Shown here: piece after piece, positions 45,404-56,408 of the stretch | Numbering within the stretch: the stretch's first letter is position 1 | How the letters are laid out: the number at the start of each line of letters is the position of its first letter | DNA from: Amoeboaphelidium protococcarum X5 | Lineage: Eukaryota; Fungi; Aphelidiomycota | Length of the DNA stretch: 64,000 nucleotides | Assembly: GCA_023515725.1 (NCBI GenBank) | Contig: JALDTO010000142.1 | Coordinates: 372,001 to 436,000 of the forward strand | Direction: 5' to 3' | Made by a program: the position numbers and the translations under genes | The notes under the pieces: generated by a model | Seen by the model: the letters and a program-made list of their open reading frames with translations, nothing else | Database searches by the model: none | Told to the model about the DNA's origin: nothing

Positions 45404-48400
45404 TCAGTAGAGATTGATCAAAACCTGTAACACTTTTTAGGCATTAACACGAGTAAATACATTCTAATCCCAGGCATTATCAACAATCTGACAATATTTG
45501 TCGAGCCTTGGATCTTGGATGGTTGGTTGAATTTATACTCTGCCACCTGCACAAACAGACTCATATATCTGTTCTTTAGTGAACCCCTTCCAAGCCGGCT
45601 GTCTGTTCAGCAGTTCCGCCAGAATGACAGCACCTGCAAACACGTCGCGCTTTGGTTTCAAATCATCAGATACAGGTTGGTTCATCCAAACTTCGGGTGC
45701 AGCATATGAAGGAGTAGAACCAGCTAGTGCATTCCAATTCAGCCCGGTAACCGTCTATGATGTGCCCAGCAGGGTACAAATACCGAAATCGGTCAGGCAG
45801 ACGCGTACCTGTCCAGATGAAGTGTCCACTAGATAATTGCCAGCTTTAATGTCGTTATGGACAACACCTGTAGCGTGCATAACCACCATAGCAGAGAATA
45901 CATCAATAGCCAGAGACTTTACGAGATCAAAATTCCATTCAACCTACTAACTTAACACGCTCTTCAAACCGATCAAATCATCCAATGATCCATTTTGGTA
46001 ATAGAACATCAACATCACCAAATTCTCAGCATCAAAACCAGCCAGTTTTGCAATATGAGCACAATCTTTGAATCTCCACATTAAAGCGACTTCTTGCAAG
46101 AAAGCTTCGGAGTTCGCCTTGTTCGATGTATATTTTGCAACCATGGTCTGGCCTTCGTATTGACGCAACGGATGGTCGGATGGGGTAGTCAGTATCTGTA
46201 CAAGCCATATACTACCTTAACCACCAGCATTCAGTTAGGAGTTTGGAACTTTACGGAAATTCTGACCCTCACTTAGCCGTAAAAATCCGGGAACTGAGAT
46301 TTCAAACGAGGTTGGGAGCATTGTCGTACCACCTTGCATTTACGTGCTAATGACCTGCATAGCAGTAGTGGTGGCGGCAGAGGACGCAACACTACTTTGT
46401 GTATACGTGCTGGCCCTTGTCATCTAAGTGCTAACCTTTTTAGTACGACGATACTTTTGGCGCGCATATAGTCCCGCAATCAGAACAGCTATCACAAATA
46501 CACCAGATACAATAGCTGCAACCGCGGATATCATTGACGATTAGCCCTATAAAGCCTGAGGCCCAGATTGGTCTCGAGCACCCTCATTTGAATTGGTGGA
46601 AACAGACTAACCTCCATTAAGATTGCCAATTCCAAAAGTTATCAGCCCATTAATTGAAGTACTTACTACAAAAGACGAGCTAGATGGCAATATAATTGAC
46701 GTCTTTGTAGAAGAGCTTAGAAAACCAGCTAAATATGTTACTGTAGACATAACGGCTGTCGATGCAGAAAGGAAGTGAGAAGTAGATGAGAATTAGGTAG
46801 CAGAACCATTGGTAACAGAGCCATTAGTAACAGCAGTACCGGTAAATACCATGGACGTAGAGAACGAGGTGGCAGTTGGTGTAGAAGTAGTGGTAGTAGT
46901 CGTAGTCGTGGTACTAGTTGTGGTAGTGGTCGGAGTGGTTGTAGTAGAGGTAGTTGTCGTAGTTGTGGTAGTAGTAGAGGTAGTTGTGGGAGTACTAGTC
47001 GTTGTTGTGGTCGTCGTCGTAGTAGTCGTAGTTGTTGTACTTGTCGTCGTAGTACTGGTGGTGGTAGTCGTCGTAGTTGTAGTAGTAAGTACCTTAGGAA
47101 GCAGATTACCAATCTTTGCCACACCTTGAACAATTGCCAAATTCTTCGTAACTCCAGAGTCTTCAATAACATCTACAGAGCTTCCACTTGTCTGAAAGGA
47201 AATGATGAAACCACGATCTTCCAACGCAAAACCTTTCTGGAGATTAACATTTTACGAGGGAGTATAAATAATAGTTTGATTGAAAAAATTGCCAGTTGAA
47301 TCAAATACCATAATGACTGCGTACTGACCGGCGAAGGGGTGCACGTACTACTTTGTTATACTACCACTGTTGTTAAAGCTGATTGTAGCGGCTGAAGACA
47401 CACCACTAAACAGCATATTATCGTTTACATCAAATTGAAGAGGTAGTTTAACAGCGGCAGAGCCAGATATAACTAACCACTTAGAAATAGACCTTGCACC
47501 CTGCAGTTTTAATAGATAAGATCCAAAAACCCCAGTTGCTCCAAGAGTCATCACTGCAAAATTTGAAGCATTATACGCAATAAAAGGACCGTTAACGAAA
47601 ATAGAAACATACGCAGCACCTGACTTATCGAAAGAGACTCCACCAGAAGTTTCATCGCCTATGCCAGCAAATCGCCAATTGTACTGGAACGCTCCAGTGG
47701 AATTAAATATCAACAGAGCACAATCAATTCCTTAAACAAAGGGCGCTGAAACCACCCGACCTGTGGAGTCAATAAGATTAACAGCATTTTATTGATTCAT
47801 CTGCATGTACAAGTCGCCATTGGAGCTAATTTACATTCCAAAGTCCAAGGCAAATGTATAGTCGTTGAGGAAATAAATCAGATTAAGATTATTATCAAGC
47901 ATAAAGACATGACCATAGCCACCACTGGAAGGACCAGCGACATTATCATTGTTATAGTATACAACTGGGTTATTTTACCAACCACCAAAACTGTTCCATA
48001 CATGGATCACGACTTAACCATTAGGGCCAGTGAGGCTATAATGAGGCACATTCCACGAGCCATCCGCGCCAAAACGTGCAGTTCTCAATAGAGTACCATT
48101 ACTAGCAAATTTGGCGACTACTGGCTGGGAGCCGCCATTTAGAGGAATGGTCTTGGCTACTAGATTAGTCGTAGTGTAAAATTTGAAATCACTTGACTAC
48201 TCCCATACAGTTGCTATAATGTTATCAAAGGGATCGACGGTAAGCTAAACCATAAAGTCGTCAGCAGCACCACTCATCATTAAATGCCACTGTAACGCGC
48301 CAAACTTATCATACTTTGCAATGTAAGCATCAGCACCACTCTGATAAACCTGGGTTAACACAAAAGAGCCATTTGCAGAGTATATCTGCTCATTCAACTT

Positions 48401-48541
48401 TCCGACAACCTAATAAGCGTAGAAATTTCCTTTAGAATCTTGTTTAGTAACGTACAAAGAGCCTGTGGCACTGATAGTAAAATCGACGCCAGCAGTGATT
48501 ACATCGGCCAGCAGCAACCAAGATGAAACTATAAACCACAT
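45404..48541 (-). CDS. Receptor-like protein kinase A (1045 aa): signal peptide, beta-rich ectodomain, Thr stalk, TM, non-RD kinase
   Basis: MWFIVSSWLLLADVITAG; poly-Thr; TM followed by RQKYRRTKK; AGGQG, VAK, FLQEVA, HNDIKAGN, DFG, YAAPE; intronless single frame. Confidence 0.88.
46860..47090 (-). repeat. ACN-codon poly-Thr mucin-like stalk of kinase A
   Basis: Low-complexity GTN repeat on the + strand. Confidence 0.9.
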
Positions 48542-49050
48542 TTTCGTATGCGAGTAATTTATTTAAAGCTTAATAGGGAGATGTAAATGAGACAAAAGCG
48601 CAAAATGACTTATAATCCGTAATCTGAACCCAATATGCATTGGAATAACCTTGGGATTGGACGAGTACAGGAATCTCTGATAGGAATCGTTATTAAATCT
48701 ATTTTCATGTCTTGTATGAAAAATGCGATAATGAAAGTAACATCAGATTCTGTATATAACATGTATATCAGCTGTTTTTCGACCGCCGCAGCTGCTGAGA
48801 GTATCGTTGCGAGTGGCTTGTTTCAAATGCTATCATACGTTTCACCTCAACAGCTTTTGGGGGAGATCATACAGTGAGAATGCAACTCTCACGGTTGCGG
48901 AGACCCCGATTTAACTGTACACGGCGTCTAAAATACAGTAAGAAATAAAGATTGATCACAACTATTTTCTTATACATTTCATCGTTTACTTTTACTATCA
49001 TCATTTTTTACTATATATCACTGTTCTAAAGTAATCAAAGAGCCCATTGC

Positions 49051-52000
49051 TCATTGAAGATTGACCAATTCATTCAAAACGCGTTGAGCATGTACACGCG
49101 TAAATATATTCTAATCCCAGGACATTTCAATAATTTGAAGATATTTGTCAAACCTTGGATCTTGGATGGCTGGTTGAATTTTAACTCTACCACCTGCACA
49201 GACAGACTCCTATATCTACTCTTTGGTGAACCCCTACCAAGCCGGCTGTCTGTTCAGCAGTTCCGCCAGTATGACAGCACCTGCAAACACGTCGCGCTTT
49301 GGCTTCAAATCATCAGATACAATTTGCTTCATCCAAACTTCCGGAGCAGCATACGTAGGAGTGGAACCAGCAAGTGCATTCCAATTCAGCCCGGTCACCA
49401 TCTTCGATGTGCCCAACAGAGTACAAATACCGAAATCGGTCAGGCAGACGCGTACCTGTCCAGATGAAGTGTCCACTAGATAGTTGGCAGCCTTGATATC
49501 GTTGTGCACGACACCTGCTGCGTGTAGCACTACCATTGCAGAGAATACGTCAATAGCGAGGGACTTGATCAGTTCAAAGTTCCAAACCATTTGCTAACTT
49601 AACACACTCTTCATATTAATAAAATCATCCAATGATCCATTCTGATAGTAAAACATCACCATAACCAAATTCTCAGCATCAAAACCAGCTAGTTTGGCAA
49701 TGTGAGCACAATCTTTAAATCTCCACATCAATGCAACCTCTTACAAGAAAGCCTCTGCACTAGCCTTATTAGTAGAGTACTTTGCAACCATAGTCTAACC
49801 ATCACATTAACGGAAAGGATGATCAGACGGAACAGTGAGTATCTAGACAAGCCAAATACTACCTTGACCACCAGCATTTAGCATAGAATTAGGAATTTTA
49901 CGAAAGTTCTGCCCTTCACTAAGCTTCAAAAATCCAGGTACAGAGATTTCAAACTAAGTAGAAACCATAGTGGTGCCACCTTACATTTATGTGCCTCGAA
50001 CCTCCATGACAGTGGAGGAAGCTGCAGAGGGTGCGGCACTGTTTTAAGTCAAAACAGTAGCTTTAGTCATCTGCGTGCTAATCTTCTTGGTACGACGGAA
50101 CTTTTGACGCGCATATAGAGCAACTACTAATACTGCGACTACAAAGATGCCGGAAACAATAGCTGCGACTGCAGATATCATTGATGACGAAGTTTATTAA
50201 GCTTATGGCCCAGATTGATCTCGAGCACCCTCATTTGTGTTCGTGGATACAGAGGAGCCTCCAATAGAACCACCAATACCAAACGTTATTAGCCCATTAG
50301 TTTAAGAGCTGACTGCAAAAGATGAGCTCGATGACAATTTAACAGACGTCTTTGTAGAAGAGCTTACTATACCAGCTTAATATGATACTGTAGAGATAAC
50401 GGCAGTCGATGCAGAAAGGGAGTGAGAAGTAAATGAGAATTATGTAGCAGAGCCATTAATAACAGAGCCATTAGCAACAGAAGTAAATACCAAGGACGTA
50501 GAGAACGAGGTGGCAGTTGGTGTAGAAGTAGTCGTGGTAGTAGTTGTCGTAGTAGTTGTCGTAGTCGTCGGAGTAGTAGTGGTGGTCGTTGTTGTCGTCG
50601 TGGTCGTAGTCGTGGTGGTAGTAGTACTTGTCGTAGTTGTGGGAGTACTAGTCGTTGTCGTGGTTGTTGTGGTCGTCGTAGTAGTCGGAGTGGTTGTGGT
50701 TGTCGTAGTAGTGGTGTACAGCAAGGTAGGTACAGGTAGGAAATCCAACAGTCTCGCAACACCTCTCTGAGTAGGAATGGCAACTTGGCCACCTCTTGTA
50801 TCATTGAACAGAACACCCTATCCATCAGTGATCAAACCAGCTAGCAATTTGTTCTGAGGAAGCCACTAAAAATAGCCAAATCTTGTATTTTGTGTTGAAT
50901 TGTACAATAGACTGCGACCCCAAATCTTGCCCAGATTGTGGTAAGCAAACACAATACCATATTGAAAGGGAAATTAACGATTGTACTGCGTTGAAATCAC
51001 ACCAGTAGTGTTGACACTCAATAAAGCAGCATCAGAATATAAAGCATAAAACAAATTATCCTAGCTGTCCATGTGCATGTAGCATGTAGTGGACCCAACA
51101 CCACTTACGCTGGACCACCATGTAACAGATGTCCCGCCATTCAGCTTGAAAAAATAACCTCCAGATACACCAGTTGCACCCATTTATAACACGGGAGTAT
51201 TAACACCATTAAAAACAGTGAACGGACCAGTGGAGGATACCTGTTAAATTGGAGCCCCGGCATTATCGAAAGTTAGCTAAATAGGCGCCTAATCGCCCGC
51301 GCCACTAAACCTCCAATAATACAAGAAGGCTCCAGTGGGATCAAACACTATCAAGTTGACATCGAAGCCAGAATCATATGAAGTATAAACTTCAAAGCCT
51401 TTAGTATCCGTGAGAGCCGTACCTGACTATGCATACTGCTGATAATAGAGCACACCCGTGGGTCCTATAGTTAAACGCGAAAATACAGCGAAACTACCAT
51501 CATCAATATTATAGATGTGATTGAGGTTATTGTCCATCATGAAGATGTGCCCGCCACCATTACTGGTTGCGACAATAACGCCATCGTTATTATACATATT
51601 CACGGGATTTGTAGGCCATCCGCCGTAAGAGTTCCACATCTGCACTGCAAACCATCCGTTGGGCCCAAGCACAGAAAAGTTTGGAACATTATACGACCCA
51701 GGAGCATACAGTTGAGCTGTGCGGAGCAATGTTCCATTAGGATGAACTTTTGCAACGACACCTTAAGTGCCACTCGGAATGTTGATAGACTTCACAGGTT
51801 AATGATTAATGCTATAATACTTAAAGTCTTGCGATGTTGTCCAAGTAGAAAAGAACAGATTATCCTGAGCGTCAACAAAAGGACCTTAACCCCAGTCATC
51901 ACCGCTACCAGCAATGTGGAAGTACCACTGCAGATTACCCTGAGCGTTAAATTTCATGTAGATACTGTCTGAACCACCTCCAGCGTAGAAAGTTGTTGTA

Positions 52001-52182
52001 GTCACAGACCCATTCGCAGAATAGATCTACTCACCAACTTTAGATACATATGCACGTGCGTAAAAGTTACCTGCGGAGTCAATAGTGGAGAGTTCATAAT
52101 CACTCGTGCTTCTAATAGTAAAATCGTTAGAAGCAACAGCAAAGTTGATAAGCAATGCAGTCAATGCCACGCGAATATTCAT
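49051..52182 (-). CDS. Receptor-like protein kinase B (1043 aa)
   Basis: MNIRVALTALLINFAVA signal; same architecture as A; HNDIKAAN, DFG, TYAAPE. Confidence 0.88.
50510..50720 (-). repeat. Poly-Thr stalk of kinase B
   Basis: ACN codon run. Confidence 0.9.
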
Positions 52183-52420
52183 TGATGGCAAATTATTCGT
52201 AAAGACTAACGTTGTAAATTGCTGACGAGTTGTACAAAAAAGCTGAACGTGGGAAAGAGAAGGATAAGCACAAAGTCTGTACTGTATGCTGATGCAATAA
52301 CAATGCAAGTTGTCTGATTGGTACATTATAAGCAGAATTGATTGGCCATTCTAGGCCGAAAAGGCAAGCAAACTGAAGCTTATACGATAAATAGATTATT
52401 TTACTTCACATTTTAAAAAT

Positions 52421-55400
52421 TCATTTCAAACCATAAAGAGAATTCAGAACCTACATTGCGTGCGGCCTAAACGTAACATCCTACTCCCAAGCAGCATAAA
52501 TGATCGCAATTAACGCGTCATTCTTTGGGTCTTCAAAGCATAGACTTAAAGAAGGACGCCCGCCGGCCAAAACAGCTTGACTTATTTGATCTCTACCTTG
52601 TCCCGCCCATGCCACTTATCTGTTGACCATCTCAGCCATTATGACAGCACCGGCATAGACGTCACGTTTCATTCTTTGTTAATCAAGCAACACTAGCTTG
52701 AGCCATACCTCAGGTGCGGCGTAAGTCGCAGTAAAGCCATTCAGGGCATTCCACGTCATACCAGTGACTGCTTTGGATGAACCCAATAGGGAGCAAATAC
52801 CAAAATCGGTAAGACATAAGCGAATTTAACCAGAAGACACATCAACCAGATAGTTACCAGCCTTAATATCATTGTGCACAACACCTGCTTGATGAGTGAC
52901 CTGTATAGCGGCAAAGACGTCCACAGACATTGAATACACCAAGTCAAAATTATAACTTACCAGGCGGCTAATTTCGCTCTTGCATTCGATGAACATTTCC
53001 AGTGAACCTTGCTAGTAATGAGCCATCAAAAGGATCATATTCAAAGGGTCAAATCCGACTATTTTTGCTATATGTGCGCTATCCTTGAATCGCCACATCA
53101 AAGCCACCTCTTACAAGAAAGCTTCAGACGAGCCAACACCATTACTATACTTGGCAACAAATTTCTCGCCAGGCTGTGGTCTTAAAGGATATTCATAAGG
53201 TAGATCCAGTATTTCAGCTAGCCAAATAGAACCTTAACCACCAGCGGTGAGTTGAGAATTGGGAATCTAACGAAAGTTGAGCCCTTCTGTCAGTCTCATG
53301 AACCCGGGAACTGAGATCTCAAATGATGTCGGTGCCAATGTTGTTCCTCCTTGCATGTTCGTAGCTCCTTAGTGCATAGTGGTAGTTAATGCAGAAGATG
53401 CCGCGCTACTTTGAGTATACGTACTTGCTCGGGTCATTTGAGAGGTTACCTTACCAAAACGGCGACGACGTAACTTATGACGAGCATATAGAGCAGCTAG
53501 TACAACTACCAGAACAAAGACAGCAGCTATTATTGCCACGATAGTCGATAACATTGAAGATGAGCCCACAAGAGCTGATGGATTAGTCTAGTTTTAAGTA
53601 GAATCGTCCACACCAGTTGTCGATTAAACCTTACTGTACGCAAAGTCTCCCAATCCAAAAGTGACAAGATCAGCAGATGAGGAAGTCCTAATAGTTGTGA
53701 ATGAGGACGACTACAGCAATGGTTAGGTTGTCTGTTAGACTAGCGACGTACTTGCCTTTGTGCTTGTACCAAGAGCCACCGTTGATGATAAATTTGCAGT
53801 ACTAGTAACTTGGGCAGCATTCCAGGTACTTGACGATGCAGCGGATGCGAAAGGCGCAGTATTATTATTAGCAGTAATTGAAGTCGTGGTAGTAGGAGTA
53901 ATAGTGGTTTTAGTTGAAGTTGTTGTCGTCGTCAATGTTGTCGTAGTTGTTGTGGAGGTGGTAGTAGATGTTGTAGTCGTAGTAGTGGGAGTACTAGTCG
54001 TTGTAGTAGTTGTAGTGGTACTTGTGGGAGTACTTGTTGTCGTGGTCGTAGTTGTTGTTGTTGTTGTGCTTGTAGTCGTCGTTGTACTTGTAGTAGTAGT
54101 AGTTGTTGTTGTCGTGGTGGTTGTGGTAGTTGTCGTCGTAGTACTAGTCGTAGTACTTGTGGTGGTAGGTACCATAGGAAGCAGATTACCAATTTTTGCA
54201 ATGCCTTGAGCGAAGGCGTAATTTTTTGTTGTACCAGAATCTTCAATAATATTCACAGCACTTCCACTTGTTTAGAAAGCTACTAAAAAGCCACGATTTG
54301 CCAACACAAAACTTCCAAAGAGAGTAATACTTTGCGCAGAAGTGTAGATTACAGTTCGGTTGAGGAAAGAGCCAGCCTAATTATGTACCATAATGATTGC
54401 ATACTGACCGGTAAAAGGATGCACATACTAATTGGTGACAACACCATTGTTGTTAAAGTTAATCGTGGCGGCTGCGGACACACCATTAAACACCATATTG
54501 TCATCTGAATCAAAAGCAAGAGATAATTTTACAGCAGCCGAGCCAGTTATAGCCCACCGTTTCAATATAGATCTTCCACCATCAAGCTTGAAGACATAAG
54601 ATCCGGATACTCCTGCAGATCCGAGCGTCATAACTGCAATATTAGAAGCATTGTAAGCAACAAAAGGACCATTGACGAACACCGAAGCATAAACCGCACC
54701 AGACTTGTCAAAAGAAACTCCACCAGGTATTTCATCACCTGAACCAGAAAAACGCCAATAATACTAGAACGCACCACTGGAGTTGAACACCAACAGAGGA
54801 CAGTCCACTCCGCTGACATAAGGTGCAGAAATCAAGCGACCTGTGGAATCGGTCAAGCTCACAGCAGTTTACTGATTCATTTGCAAAAATTAATCCCCAT
54901 TAGCGTTAATTGTCATTGTGACATCCACGGCGAAAGTGTTATCGTTGTGGAAGTACACAAGATTTAGATTATTGTCAAGCATGAACCTATGACCAGTGCC
55001 GCTACTGGACGGGCCAGCAACATTATCATTATTATAATAGACGACTGGATTGTTTTACCAACCACCGAAGTTGTTCCATATATGAACCAATACCTGTCCA
55101 TTAGGACCCACGACTGAACTCTGTGGCACATTCCACGAGCCAGCCGCATCCAAACGCGCAGTCCTTAACAGAGTGCCATTACTGGAAAATTTTGCAACAA
55201 CTGCCTAAGAGCCACCACTTAAAGGAATAGTTTTGGCCACTTGGTTAGTTGTTGTGTAAATTTTGAAATCACTAGACTACTCCCATATTACTGCAATAAT
55301 GTTATCAGAGGGATCAATGTTAAGATAATACATATAATCGTCATTAACACCTGTAATCATGAGATGCCACTACAACGCGCCAAATTAATCATACTTTGCA

Positions 55401-55621
55401 ATGAACGATTCAGCACTGCTCTGATAGACCTGAGTTTGAACAAATGAGCCATTAGCAGAGTATATACGCTCATTCGCGACTCTGACATGTGAATATGTGT
55501 AGAAGAAGCCTTTTGAGTCTTGTTTAGTTGCCCATGTACCCGTAGCAGCCCTCACAGTAAAGTCGACGCCAGCAGTGATCAAGTTGGCAAGCTGCAAGGA
55601 AGCTATCACGATAGCCCACAT
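52421..55621 (-). CDS. Receptor-like protein kinase C (1066 aa)
   Basis: MWAIVIASLQLANLITAG signal; TM IVAIIAAVFVLVVVLAALY; HNDIKAGN, DFG, TYAAPE. Confidence 0.88.
53880..54170 (-). repeat. Poly-Thr stalk of kinase C
   Basis: ACN codon run. Confidence 0.9.
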
Positions 55622-56408
55622 TCTTAGAAATAGTTACATATCGAATCAAACTATTTAAAAATTATTTAATCTTATAATTATCAGCTTAATCAATTATATG
55701 ATGTAAAAAGGAGCACCGTAACGAAATTTTGGGACTATATGCAGCGAAGTGGCTTGGGATTGGCCAGAATAAGCGCCTCTGATTGGAGCCGCAATTATAA
55801 TTGATGGGTTTGGCCTCATTCACTTACTTTAATCTTTGGCCAAATTCAGTGCATAACGTTGCATTAGACTTTATATGTACAATGGCTACTGTTTCAGTAA
55901 TACGCTATTTTTGCATTTAAAAATACGCTGAAGAATATGGTAACAAAGTAGTGATGGGAGCATGACGCTTCAACAGAATCGCGCCAAAGATGATTAGAAA
56001 ATAGAATTTTATTGCACTATAGATATATTTCGCAGCTCTAATTGATTTGTTCAGTTAGAATCACTACGGCTGCATCTGCGTAAAATCCATACACAATCGA
56101 GAGTTTTATACAGTACCACAAAGCAACCGCGCGAAAATGAATTCAAAAACTGAGAAAAAGTCCAGTAAGTTCTATATCGGTTATACGAGCATCTATGAGA
56201 ACAAGGGTGTCAGTGTACAGTAGAGTTTAATCCTTTGCTGTTTCATGCCTTGATCATAGCGGCGGAAATCATTTCAATCAACGGGCGACCGTCATCTGTC
56301 TATCTATTCATTTTCGCTATTTCGCCCCATCGCAACAGACTGAAAGTGAGAGCCGGTGAAACCATCAGGATTCCTCTCTCTCCATCTTTCGTTGCTCCCA
56401 GTACAACA

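What the first reader, a model, noticed from the sequence alone, without database searches (positions are those of the whole stretch)
45404..55800. Kinase A is a chimera: C-type ectodomain on a B-type stalk/kinase, with the junction in the poly-Thr repeat
Upstream of the stalk A resembles C (MWFIV..ITAGVDFT..TKQDSKG vs MWAIV..ITAGVDFT..TKQDSKG; QGVAKIGNLLP vs QGIAKIGNLLP) while B is divergent. Downstream A resembles B (STPTATSFSTS.VFT..NGSAT, DFKPKRDVFAGAVILAELLNRQPAW vs DLKPKRDVFAGAVILAELLNRQPAW) while C is divergent. The ACN repeat appears to act as a recombination hinge that shuffles sensor and signalling modules, a possible receptor-diversification mechanism.
Basis: seen in the sequence. 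Interest (0 to 1): 0.82.

Follow-up and report, generated by a model that had tools for sequence, protein, structure and literature searches.

The report
Receptor kinase genes with swapped modules

Summary
TAA and TAG are sense codons here, so A (45404-48541), B (49051-52182) and C (52421-55621) are single intronless minus-strand ORFs: signal peptide, about 460-aa probable SBBP-type propeller, (ACN)n poly-Thr stalk, TM helix, non-RD kinase. Ectodomain identity is A-C 69% and A-B 38%. After the stalk it is A-B 81% and A-C 52%, and the switch falls inside the roughly 190-nt stalk.

It is not a misassembly. A duplicated copy of the locus on another contig (89-93% identical) has the same mosaic, and an unlinked paralogue, D, carries the A-type combination on a 43-aa stalk.

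AU tests reject each half's tree when imposed on the other half (p=0.001 and 0.011), so at least one old exchange across the stalk is needed. Its direction is unresolved: the A/D ancestor, C or B could be the recombinant.

Between those tracts, A is closest to D. On the sister contig the tracts are nearly identical (p=0.0002).

Across at least 26 family members, G, and probably M, also combine discordant ectodomain and kinase lineages.

This is a known kind of evolution seen in a new family. Earlier notes of this scan already described the family elsewhere in this genome.

The parts
45404..48541 (-). Gene A: one intronless ORF of 1045 aa (TAA/TAG read as sense, TGA stop). Signal peptide, ectodomain, poly-Thr stalk, Ser-rich segment, TM helix, non-RD kinase.
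   Evidence: Code-6 translation and CDS check: 24 in-frame TAR codons, TGA end. Pfam Pkinase hits on TAR-free pieces.
47102..48541 (-). A signal peptide and ectodomain (aa 1-480), type T1. 69% identical to C, 70% to D, 38% to B. Probable SBBP-like beta-propeller.
   Evidence: Identity table. Ectodomain trees: A/C/D clade 100/100. ESM Atlas SBBP clusters at 0.96-0.97. Pfam gives only a weak DUF5122 hit.
46847..47101 (-). A stalk: 85 aa, 74% Thr, an imperfect (ACN)n repeat (ACT 25, ACC 13, ACA 12, ACG 13). The interval in which similarity switches from C-like to B-like.
   Evidence: TRF reports period 3, 69 copies, 68% matches at 46881-47087.
46738..46904 (-). Gene-conversion tract 1 in A (last stalk codons and the Ser-rich segment, includes STPTATSFSTS). 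No fixed A-versus-B difference. Partner in B is 50385-50545.
   Evidence: Gap of 211 alignment columns between fixed A|B differences. A-B Ks 0.30 here. Contig-wise AB|A2B2 sites. A2-B2 identical runs of 91 and 67 nt.
46469..46540 (-). A transmembrane helix (aa 668-691), followed by a basic stretch.
   Evidence: Hydrophobic run found in the sequence. Read from sequence only; no TM predictor was run.
45407..46240 (-). A kinase domain: glycine-loop-like GGQGS, VAKY lysine, HNDIK (non-RD), DFG, APE.
   Evidence: Pfam PF00069 on pieces. Motif positions. PDB relatives are generic Ser/Thr kinases, e.g. PAK4 at about 1e-7.
45488..45871 (-). Gene-conversion tract 2 in A (kinase C-lobe from HND onward, includes DLKPKRDVFAGAVILAELLNRQPAW). 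Partner in B is 49135-49518.
   Evidence: 383 nt without a fixed A|B difference, against about one per 10 nt elsewhere. A-B Ks 0.43 against saturated Ks in the N-lobe. On the sister contig A2-B2 are identical for 108, 174 and 69 nt; a run of 45 polymorphic sites gives p=0.0002.
49051..52182 (-). Gene B: 1043 aa, same architecture. Ectodomain type T2 (38-40% to A, C and D). Cytoplasmic part in kinase clade K1 with A and D. Stalk 50488-50736.
52421..55621 (-). Gene C: 1066 aa, same architecture. Ectodomain type T1 (69% to A, 76% to D). Cytoplasmic part is an orphan lineage K2 (49-52% to A, B and D). Stalk 53870-54184.

Best explanation
A, B and C are tandem members of a family of at least 26 intronless receptor-like kinases: propeller ectodomain, poly-Thr stalk, TM helix, non-RD kinase. 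The family evolves module by module. Two layers of recombination are superimposed. Layer 1 (inferred): at least one old exchange, with its junction in or next to the stalk, gave the ectodomain and the cytoplasmic half different genealogies. The ectodomain clade T1 holds A, C and D, with B far outside. The kinase clade K1 holds A, B and D, with C outside. This predates the A/D duplication and the duplication that produced contigs C142 and C98. Its direction is not resolved: the recombinant may be the A/D ancestor (C-type 5' half plus B-type 3' half), or C (T1 ectodomain on an orphan kinase), or B. Layer 2 (shown): recurrent short gene conversion between the neighbours A and B. It is confined to the sequence 3' of the stalk, because the two ectodomains are too different to pair. 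One tract starts in the last stalk codons and runs about 170 nt. The other covers about 380 nt of the kinase C-lobe. These events happened both before and after the C142/C98 split, and probably from A2 to B2 on C98. The stalk is an imperfect (ACN)n repeat of about 130-460 nt in the eleven stalks measured, and a Thr/Ser/Pro-rich stalk is present in all kinase-bearing members found. It is the only stretch of shared sequence next to the module boundary, so it is the likely site of pairing for the exchanges. That step is inferred. All genes are under purifying selection (Ka/Ks about 0.1-0.25).
For: Mosaic pattern. Not an artefact: the C98 copy (89-93% identical, with an extra 8.2-kb insertion between A2 and B2) has the same mosaic, and D on C154 carries T1+K1 on a 43-aa stalk. 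Incongruence: the ectodomain rejects the kinase topology (p-AU 0.001), and the central kinase part, outside the conversion tracts, rejects the ectodomain topology (p-AU 0.011). An A+B clade in the ectodomain is rejected at p=0.003 and a C+D clade in the kinase at p=0.006. Gene conversion: A-B Ks is 0.30 and 0.43 in the tracts, while pS is 0.74 (saturated) between them. Gaps of 383 and 211 nt are free of fixed A|B differences, against 164 such sites in 1608 nt. A2-B2 has a run of 45 matching polymorphic sites, p=0.0002. Site patterns show 'B alone' and contig-wise AB|A2B2 sites inside the tracts. In codons 715-915 A pairs with D (78 sites against 41 and 40). Family-wide: the G ectodomain groups with the H group (100/99) while its kinase sits in clade I next to E (98/99 and 93/98), and placing G with the H kinases is rejected at p=0.012. 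M has an unrelated ectodomain on an H-clade kinase. Stalk lengths differ between duplicated copies (85/88, 83/72, 105/84, 154/121 aa), which shows repeat instability.
Against: No donor or parent can be assigned for the old event. Flanks carry no usable signal. Synonymous sites are near saturation for the deep comparisons. The order within T1 and within K1 is only moderately supported (87/86; an A+D clade is not rejected). Strong rate shifts in the B ectodomain and the C kinase could mimic part of the incongruence, and AU tests share the model's weaknesses with long branches. For the window's own A-B pair the longest-run test alone is not significant (p=0.06), so the case for that pair rests on the Ks contrast and the gaps free of fixed differences. 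No read or contig spans the whole stalk into unique sequence on both sides. Nothing shows that the repeat itself promotes recombination rather than merely marking where homology ends.
Confidence: 0.8

Rival explanations
1. The ancestor of A and D arose as a recombinant that took the 5' half (T1 ectodomain) from the C lineage and the 3' half (stalk end, TM, K1 kinase) from the B lineage, with the junction in the stalk. One route is duplication of the C-B pair followed by a deletion between the two stalks, which gives the observed order C-B-A. D is a later dispersed copy.
For: A single event with both parents present and adjacent explains both anomalies. Protein distances fit one date: the A-C ectodomain distance (0.42) and the A-B central cytoplasmic distance (0.23) stand in the same ratio as A-D (0.41 and 0.22). 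An A+D clade is not rejected in either half. In the central cytoplasmic part A pairs with D, with B outside. The gene order fits.
Against: Synonymous divergence does not fit one date: pS for the A-C ectodomain is 0.58, against 0.65-0.74 for the A-B central cytoplasmic part. The ML trees prefer (A,(C,D)) and (A,(D,B)). The A 5' flank shows no homology to that of C, nor the A 3' flank to that of B. The kinase tree puts E and G closer to K1 than C is (88/89), which conflicts with the ectodomain tree, although the alternative is not rejected (p=0.13).
Confidence: 0.35
2. C, and perhaps B, is the recombinant and A/D keeps the ancestral pairing. C is an orphan kinase lineage (K2) that received a T1 ectodomain from the A/D lineage. 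B is an older paralogue of A/D whose kinase half has been kept similar by repeated conversion from A while its ectodomain diverged freely.
For: With C set aside, the ectodomain and kinase trees agree for B, A/D and E. The C ectodomain is nested in T1 and is closest to D (76-77% aa; Ks 0.71 in codons 60-260). Conversion of the B-type 3' half by an A-type donor is suggested on C98 by the 'B alone' site pattern. The A-B central part is older at synonymous sites than the A-C ectodomain.
Against: The cytoplasmic half of B is about three times too similar to A/D at the protein level for its ectodomain distance (0.23 against 1.5-1.7, while E-A/D is about 0.9 against 1.9). This needs a second old event or a rate shift. 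No other K2 or T2 gene exists in the genome to serve as parent.
Confidence: 0.35
3. No exchange at all. There is one gene tree, with extreme acceleration of the B ectodomain and the C kinase after duplication.
For: The unrooted quartet AB|CD is the same in both halves by pairwise distance. Receptor ectodomains often evolve fast.
Against: With outgroups, every shared topology tested is rejected: p=0.003, 0.006, 0.001 and 0.011. B is no closer to A than to C or D in the ectodomain (38.1, 38.8 and 39.2%). C is no closer to D than to A in the kinase (49 against 52%). Ka/Ks stays at or below 0.5 wherever Ks could be estimated.
Confidence: 0.07
4. Assembly chimera across the repeat.
For: Short-read contigs break at the stalk and overlap by only 21-30 nt.
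Against: The same architecture was assembled independently on contig C98 at about 93% identity. D has the same combination with a 129-nt stalk. A 2364-nt contig from a 2013 biofilm metagenome runs from the stalk through the A ectodomain into the 3' end of B. The ORFs are intact and under purifying selection.
Confidence: 0.02

Closest known systems
Tandem receptor-like kinase clusters of plants with gene conversion (e.g. the Arabidopsis OAK/At5g59670 cluster, PMC3136440; the rice Xa21 family, from my own knowledge)
   Same: Tandem arrays of receptor kinases in which recent gene conversion copies part of one paralogue onto its neighbour, and in which promoter, ectodomain and kinase trees disagree. 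PMC3136440 reports an identical 2.7-kb tract ending 60 bp into the kinase-coding sequence. Xa21 is also a non-RD kinase.
   Different: Different kingdom, a different ectodomain (probable SBBP propeller rather than malectin or LRR) and no introns. Here conversion acts on the kinase side and stops at a poly-Thr stalk. No phenotype is known.
Yeast cell-surface adhesins (ALS, FLO, IFF/HYR) that recombine at Ser/Thr-rich tandem-repeat stalks (PMC8712946; Verstrepen et al. 2005, as cited there)
   Same: A glycosylated Ser/Thr-rich repeat stalk separates a binding domain from the rest of the protein, and recombinants carry the N-terminal domain of one gene on the stalk and C-terminus of another. Repeat length is unstable.
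   Different: Adhesins have no kinase and are GPI- or wall-anchored, and their repeats are long units (about 36-45 aa) rather than a codon-level (ACN)n run. Experimental proof of repeat-driven recombination exists there and not here.
Receptor-like protein kinase expansion of aphelids
   Same: The same gene family and probably the same organism: propeller, mucin-like stalk and kinase receptors expanded in Amoeboaphelidium.
   Different: I could not read that paper. I found no description of ectodomain/kinase re-assortment or of A-B gene conversion in the texts available to me.
Domain shuffling of receptor tyrosine kinases in choanoflagellates and filastereans (from my own knowledge)
   Same: Lineage-specific receptor kinase repertoires built by combining different ectodomains with related kinases.
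   Different: There the shuffling is inferred between very different domain types over long times and is intron-associated. Here it involves homologous propellers in intronless genes, with detectable recent conversion.

Membership tests
Eukaryotic protein kinase (Pfam PF00069) | Profile match and catalytic motifs: beta-3 Lys, HxD catalytic loop, DFG, APE | tested here: met
   Pkinase hits on TAR-free pieces, best 1e-17 and 64.9 bits against a cut-off of 31.7. VAKY, HNDIK, DFG and APE located in A, B and C.
Non-RD kinases | Arg before the catalytic Asp is replaced | tested here: met
   HNDIK in A, B and C and HNDIK, HNDVK or HDDIK in the other members.
Receptor-like kinase architecture | N-terminal signal peptide, extracellular domain, a single TM helix, cytoplasmic kinase | tested here: inconclusive
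   A hydrophobic N-terminus and a 24-30-aa hydrophobic run followed by basic residues are visible in the sequence. No dedicated signal-peptide or TM predictor was available.
SBBP beta-propeller (Pfam PF06739) | Profile match to SBBP repeats, or a seven-bladed propeller fold | tested here: inconclusive
   Pfam gave no SBBP hit on pieces of up to 127 aa, only DUF5122 at E=0.015. By ESM Atlas features the ten best family-bearing hits share a family or clan, SBBP among the listed rows, at 0.96-0.97. No structure was predicted, because TAR codons limit uninterrupted pieces.
Recombinant (mosaic) gene | Significantly different genealogies on the two sides of a breakpoint | tested here: met
   Cross-imposed topologies are rejected, p-AU 0.001 and 0.011.
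Recombinant (mosaic) gene | Identified parental lineages and direction: which gene is the recombinant | tested here: inconclusive
   An A+D clade is not rejected (p=0.14, 0.20). C as sister to K1 is not rejected (p=0.13). Flanks are uninformative.
Ectopic gene conversion between paralogues | Tracts of abnormally low divergence bounded by normally diverged sequence, significant by a run test | tested here: met
   A2-B2 run of 45 polymorphic sites, p=0.0002. A-B2 run of 20, p=0.0004. Tract Ks 0.14-0.43 against saturated Ks outside. Gaps free of fixed differences. The window's A-B pair alone gives p=0.06.
Repeat-mediated recombination hinge | Breakpoints cluster in the repeat more than the domain layout and the limits of homology would predict, or the repeat raises recombination rate | not testable with these tools
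   One conversion tract ends in the last stalk codons on both contigs, and the old switch lies within the stalk. The stalk is also the only permissible junction for a functional protein.

The most novel reading that the evidence does not exclude
The (ACN)n stalk shared by all kinase-bearing members found (at least 26 receptor genes) works as a common recombination cassette boundary. Ectopic pairing at the stalk lets a unicellular algal parasitoid re-assort sensor propellers and kinase modules across tandem and unlinked loci, while gene conversion keeps the signalling halves of neighbours uniform. This would be a germline combinatorial system for receptor diversification, comparable to adhesin stalk recombination in yeasts but applied to signalling receptors.
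Probability: 0.15. Interest if true: 0.7.

Novelty: new member of a known kind. Interest (0 to 1): 0.42.

Why it matters
It shows how a lineage-specific receptor kinase family in a sister group of Fungi diversifies. Sensor and signalling modules have separate histories, and neighbouring genes still exchange sequence. That affects how the family should be classified, because trees made from whole genes will mislead. It also warns that similarity between paralogues here does not date duplications. Finally, it offers a tractable natural case for testing whether low-complexity Thr-coding repeats promote ectopic recombination. It does not reveal a new mechanism: gene conversion and domain swapping in tandem receptor and adhesin families are well documented.

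Tried and rejected
1. Reading the region with the standard code gave many short ORFs that looked like exons. I dropped this once it was clear that internal stops were only ever TAA or TAG and that code 6 gives single ORFs ending in TGA.

2. Comparing flanks to polarise the exchange found no A-C 5' similarity and no A-B 3' similarity. Only 47-51-bp patches turned up, between A and D (3' flank) and between C2 and D (5' flank). This was uninformative.

3. The reads were not decisive. Only de Bruijn contigs were served, they break at the stalk, and no record spans it into unique sequence on both sides. Misassembly was excluded by other means.

4. Pfam names no family for the ectodomain pieces.

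5. The no-exchange model with rate shifts only was tested and rejected.

6. A simple unequal crossover between B and C as the origin of A was considered and rejected. It would place the T1+K1 recombinant between its parents or delete them, whereas the observed order is C-B-A. A duplication followed by a stalk-to-stalk deletion, or gene conversion, would fit.

7. Searches not run. The search for homologous proteins was not run because its length window (0.55-1.75 times a piece of at most 152 aa) excludes the roughly 1000-aa relatives. The big HMMER search and structure prediction were not run because their cost was not justified for a question about recombination. Whole proteins read through TAA/TAG were never sent to a search tool. 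Only TAR-free pieces were sent, by reference. Full-length code-6 translations were used only inside local scripts. No spliced model was needed, because the genes are intronless.

Full report
WHAT IS THERE

With the standard code the region looks like a string of short ORFs. In a genome-wide search every internal stop in more than 100 kinase matches was TAA or TAG, never TGA. Translated with TAA/TAG as sense, the region holds three single, intronless minus-strand ORFs that end in TGA:
- A, 45404-48541, 1045 aa
- B, 49051-52182, 1043 aa
- C, 52421-55621, 1066 aa

Each carries 24-32 in-frame TAR codons.

The architecture is a hydrophobic N-terminus, an ectodomain of about 460 aa, a stalk of 83-105 aa that is 74-76% Thr, a Ser-rich segment, one hydrophobic helix followed by basic residues, and a protein kinase with VAKY, HNDIK (non-RD), DFG and APE. 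The stalks are encoded by an imperfect (ACN)n repeat with all four third bases. Pfam names no family for the ectodomain pieces. ESM Atlas features point to SBBP-type beta-propellers at 0.96-0.97, which is a lead and not a proof.

The window is C142:372001-436000 of a 23.6-Mb assembly. Three things fit Amoeboaphelidium protococcarum as described in PMC10608142 and as named in earlier notes of this scan: the reassigned stop codons, gene pairs at about 90-95% identity throughout the genome, and hits in freshwater and biofilm samples. I did not verify the species.

Because the tools take no protein read through a stop, I sent only TAR-free pieces to search tools, by reference. Full-length code-6 translations were used only in local scripts. 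No spliced model was involved.

DNA:
- A 45399-47080 matches B at 79.8% over 1686 nt.
- A 46886-48542 matches C at 73.6% over 1664 nt.
- The A and C kinase halves are only 65.5% identical.
- The B ectodomain has no DNA match to A or C.

Protein:
- Ectodomain: A-C 69%, A-B 38%.
- After the stalk: A-B 81%, A-C 52%.

Sliding windows put the switch inside the stalk, 46847-47101.

IT IS NOT A MISASSEMBLY

Contig C98 carries a collinear duplicated copy, A2, B2 and C2, at 89-93% DNA identity, with an extra 8.2-kb insertion between A2 and B2. It shows the same mosaic. An unlinked paralogue, D, on contig C154 has the A-type combination over its whole length on a stalk of only 43 aa.

The public read sets served were only short-read contigs. 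They tile the gene but break at the stalk. One 2364-nt contig from a 2013 biofilm metagenome runs from the stalk through the A ectodomain into the 3' end of B. No long reads were available.

THE TWO HALVES HAVE DIFFERENT GENEALOGIES

- Ectodomain trees: A, C and D form a clade (100/100), with B outside on a long branch at about the level of the more distant members E and F.
- Cytoplasmic trees: A, B and D form a clade (100/99), with C outside.

Because the unrooted quartet AB|CD is the same in both halves, I tested shared topologies with outgroups:
- A+B clade in the ectodomain: rejected, p=0.003.
- C+D clade in the kinase: rejected, p=0.006.
- Kinase topology imposed on the ectodomain: rejected, p=0.001.
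- Ectodomain topology imposed on the central cytoplasmic part, outside the conversion tracts described below: rejected, p=0.011.

At least one old exchange across the stalk is therefore needed, unless rate shifts beyond what the models handle are at work.

WHICH GENE IS THE HYBRID IS NOT RESOLVED

An A+D clade is not rejected in either half (p=0.14 and 0.20), so any 'A chimera' would be the A/D ancestor.

That reading needs one event with both parents adjacent. It fits the protein distances: 0.42 for the A-C ectodomain and 0.23 for the A-B central cytoplasmic part, in the same ratio as A-D at 0.41 and 0.22. It also fits the gene order C-B-A through a duplication followed by a stalk-to-stalk deletion.

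Against it, synonymous divergence differs: pS is 0.58 for the A-C ectodomain and 0.65-0.74 for the A-B central cytoplasmic part.

With C set aside, the two trees agree for B, A/D and E. This favours C as the recombinant, with a T1 ectodomain on an orphan kinase. C as sister to the A/B/D kinases is not rejected either (p=0.13). Flanks give no help. I rate the two polarities about equal.

A-B identity 3' of the stalk is not uniform:
- 84-96% just after the stalk
- 66-76% through the TM helix, juxtamembrane part and N-lobe
- 88-94% in the C-lobe

A-B synonymous divergence follows the same pattern: Ks 0.30, then saturated (pS 0.74), then Ks 0.43. A-D stays at Ks 0.7-0.85 across these three 3' segments.

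Fixed A-versus-B differences shared by both contigs occur about once per 10 nt, but they are absent over 211 alignment columns (A 46738-46904) and over 383 nt (A 45488-45871).

On C98 the tracts are almost identical between A2 and B2, with runs of 91, 67, 108, 174 and 69 nt. A run of 45 consecutive polymorphic sites gives a permutation p of 0.0002. In the C-lobe, B is the odd one out of the four copies. That points to a recent A2-to-B2 event on top of an older one. In the post-stalk tract, sites of the type A=B, A2=B2 indicate separate events on each contig.

Between the tracts, A pairs with D and not with B (78 sites against 41 and 40).

The ectodomain is patchy too. D is closer to C in codons 60-260 (Ks 0.71) and closer to A in codons 260-480 (Ks 0.52).

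For the window's own A-B pair the run test alone is not significant (p=0.06). The case for that pair rests on the Ks contrast and on the gaps free of fixed differences.

FAMILY CONTEXT

At least 26 genes share the layout, all with a Thr/Ser/Pro-rich stalk. Their ectodomains fall into five groups.
- G has an H-group ectodomain (100/99; 42% identity to H1p against 18% to A), but a kinase in the clade of A-E, next to E (98/99 and 93/98). Placing G with the H kinases is rejected at p=0.012.
- M carries an unrelated, shorter ectodomain on a kinase inside the H clade.
- F has the group-I ectodomain, a Ser-rich stalk and a TM helix, but no kinase.

Re-assortment of modules at the stalk is thus a property of the family and not of gene A alone.

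Selection is purifying throughout (Ka/Ks about 0.1-0.25 in ectodomain and kinase).

ROLE OF THE REPEAT

The old switch and one conversion tract end lie in the stalk, and stalk lengths differ between duplicated copies. However, the stalk is also the only place where a junction leaves both modules intact, and it is where A/B homology stops. The data are consistent with a hinge without demonstrating one.

COMPARISON WITH KNOWN SYSTEMS

Gene conversion and discordant segment trees in tandem receptor kinase arrays are documented in plants (PMC3136440). N-terminal domains moved onto the Ser/Thr-rich repeat stalk of another gene are documented for yeast adhesins (PMC8712946). A difference in receptor-like protein kinase sets between aphelids and fungi is reported in work cited by PMC10608142, which I could not read.

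This case is a new member of that known kind. It has a clear two-layer history and a useful internal control in the duplicated contig.

VERDICT

Novelty is modest and interest moderate.

Noticed in passing
whole window and genome; e.g. 45404-55621: TAA and TAG are used as sense codons, 24-35 per gene in the 13 family genes checked, and TGA is the only terminator. In more than 100 genome-wide kinase matches the internal stops were only ever TAA or TAG.
   Followed up: partly
L031:7587-10000 and L032:1-5820 (C98:297587-305820), between A2 and B2; absent from the window between 48542 and 49050: An 8.2-kb insertion on the sister contig carries long ORFs with a protein-primed type-B DNA polymerase (PF03175, 1e-50), an rve integrase (5e-11) and an HNH nuclease. 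This resembles a Polinton/Maverick-like element. These ORFs are open in the standard code, so they lack the in-frame TAA/TAG that host genes are full of.
   Followed up: partly
gene A 45404-48541 versus A2 on C98: A and A2 are far more alike (Ks 0.05; 5' flank 96.7% identical) than B-B2 (Ks 0.28-0.44) or C-C2 (0.18-0.34). The A 3' flank is only 70% identical to that of A2. This suggests homogenisation between the two duplicated contigs over gene A.
   Followed up: partly
L037:3105-5564 (C142:97105-99564) and L038:3310-5715: F and F2 have the same group-I ectodomain, a Ser-rich rather than Thr-rich stalk and a TM helix, but only a short tail and no kinase. They are a receptor-like protein version of the family, and the two copies are only 76% identical.
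   Followed up: no
L053 (C212:449601-454900) and L054 (C264:930701-936100): M1 and M1p have a shorter (about 370 aa) ectodomain with no detectable similarity to the other groups, joined by a poly-Thr stalk to a kinase that sits inside the H-group kinase clade.
   Followed up: partly
L034:2969-6007 (C154:737969-741007), gene D: The D ectodomain is itself a mosaic. Codons 60-260 are closest to C (sites CD|A 87 against 43 and 52) and codons 260-480 are closest to A. No duplicated partner of D was found, unlike for the other members.
   Followed up: partly
stalks: 46847-47101, 50488-50736, 53870-54184: Stalk length differs between the duplicated copies: A 85/88 aa, B 83/72, C 105/84, G 154/121. 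In-frame indels of 6-12 nt appear in other read sets, so the repeat is length-unstable.
   Followed up: partly
Both A and B encode DLKPKRD.
   Followed up: yes
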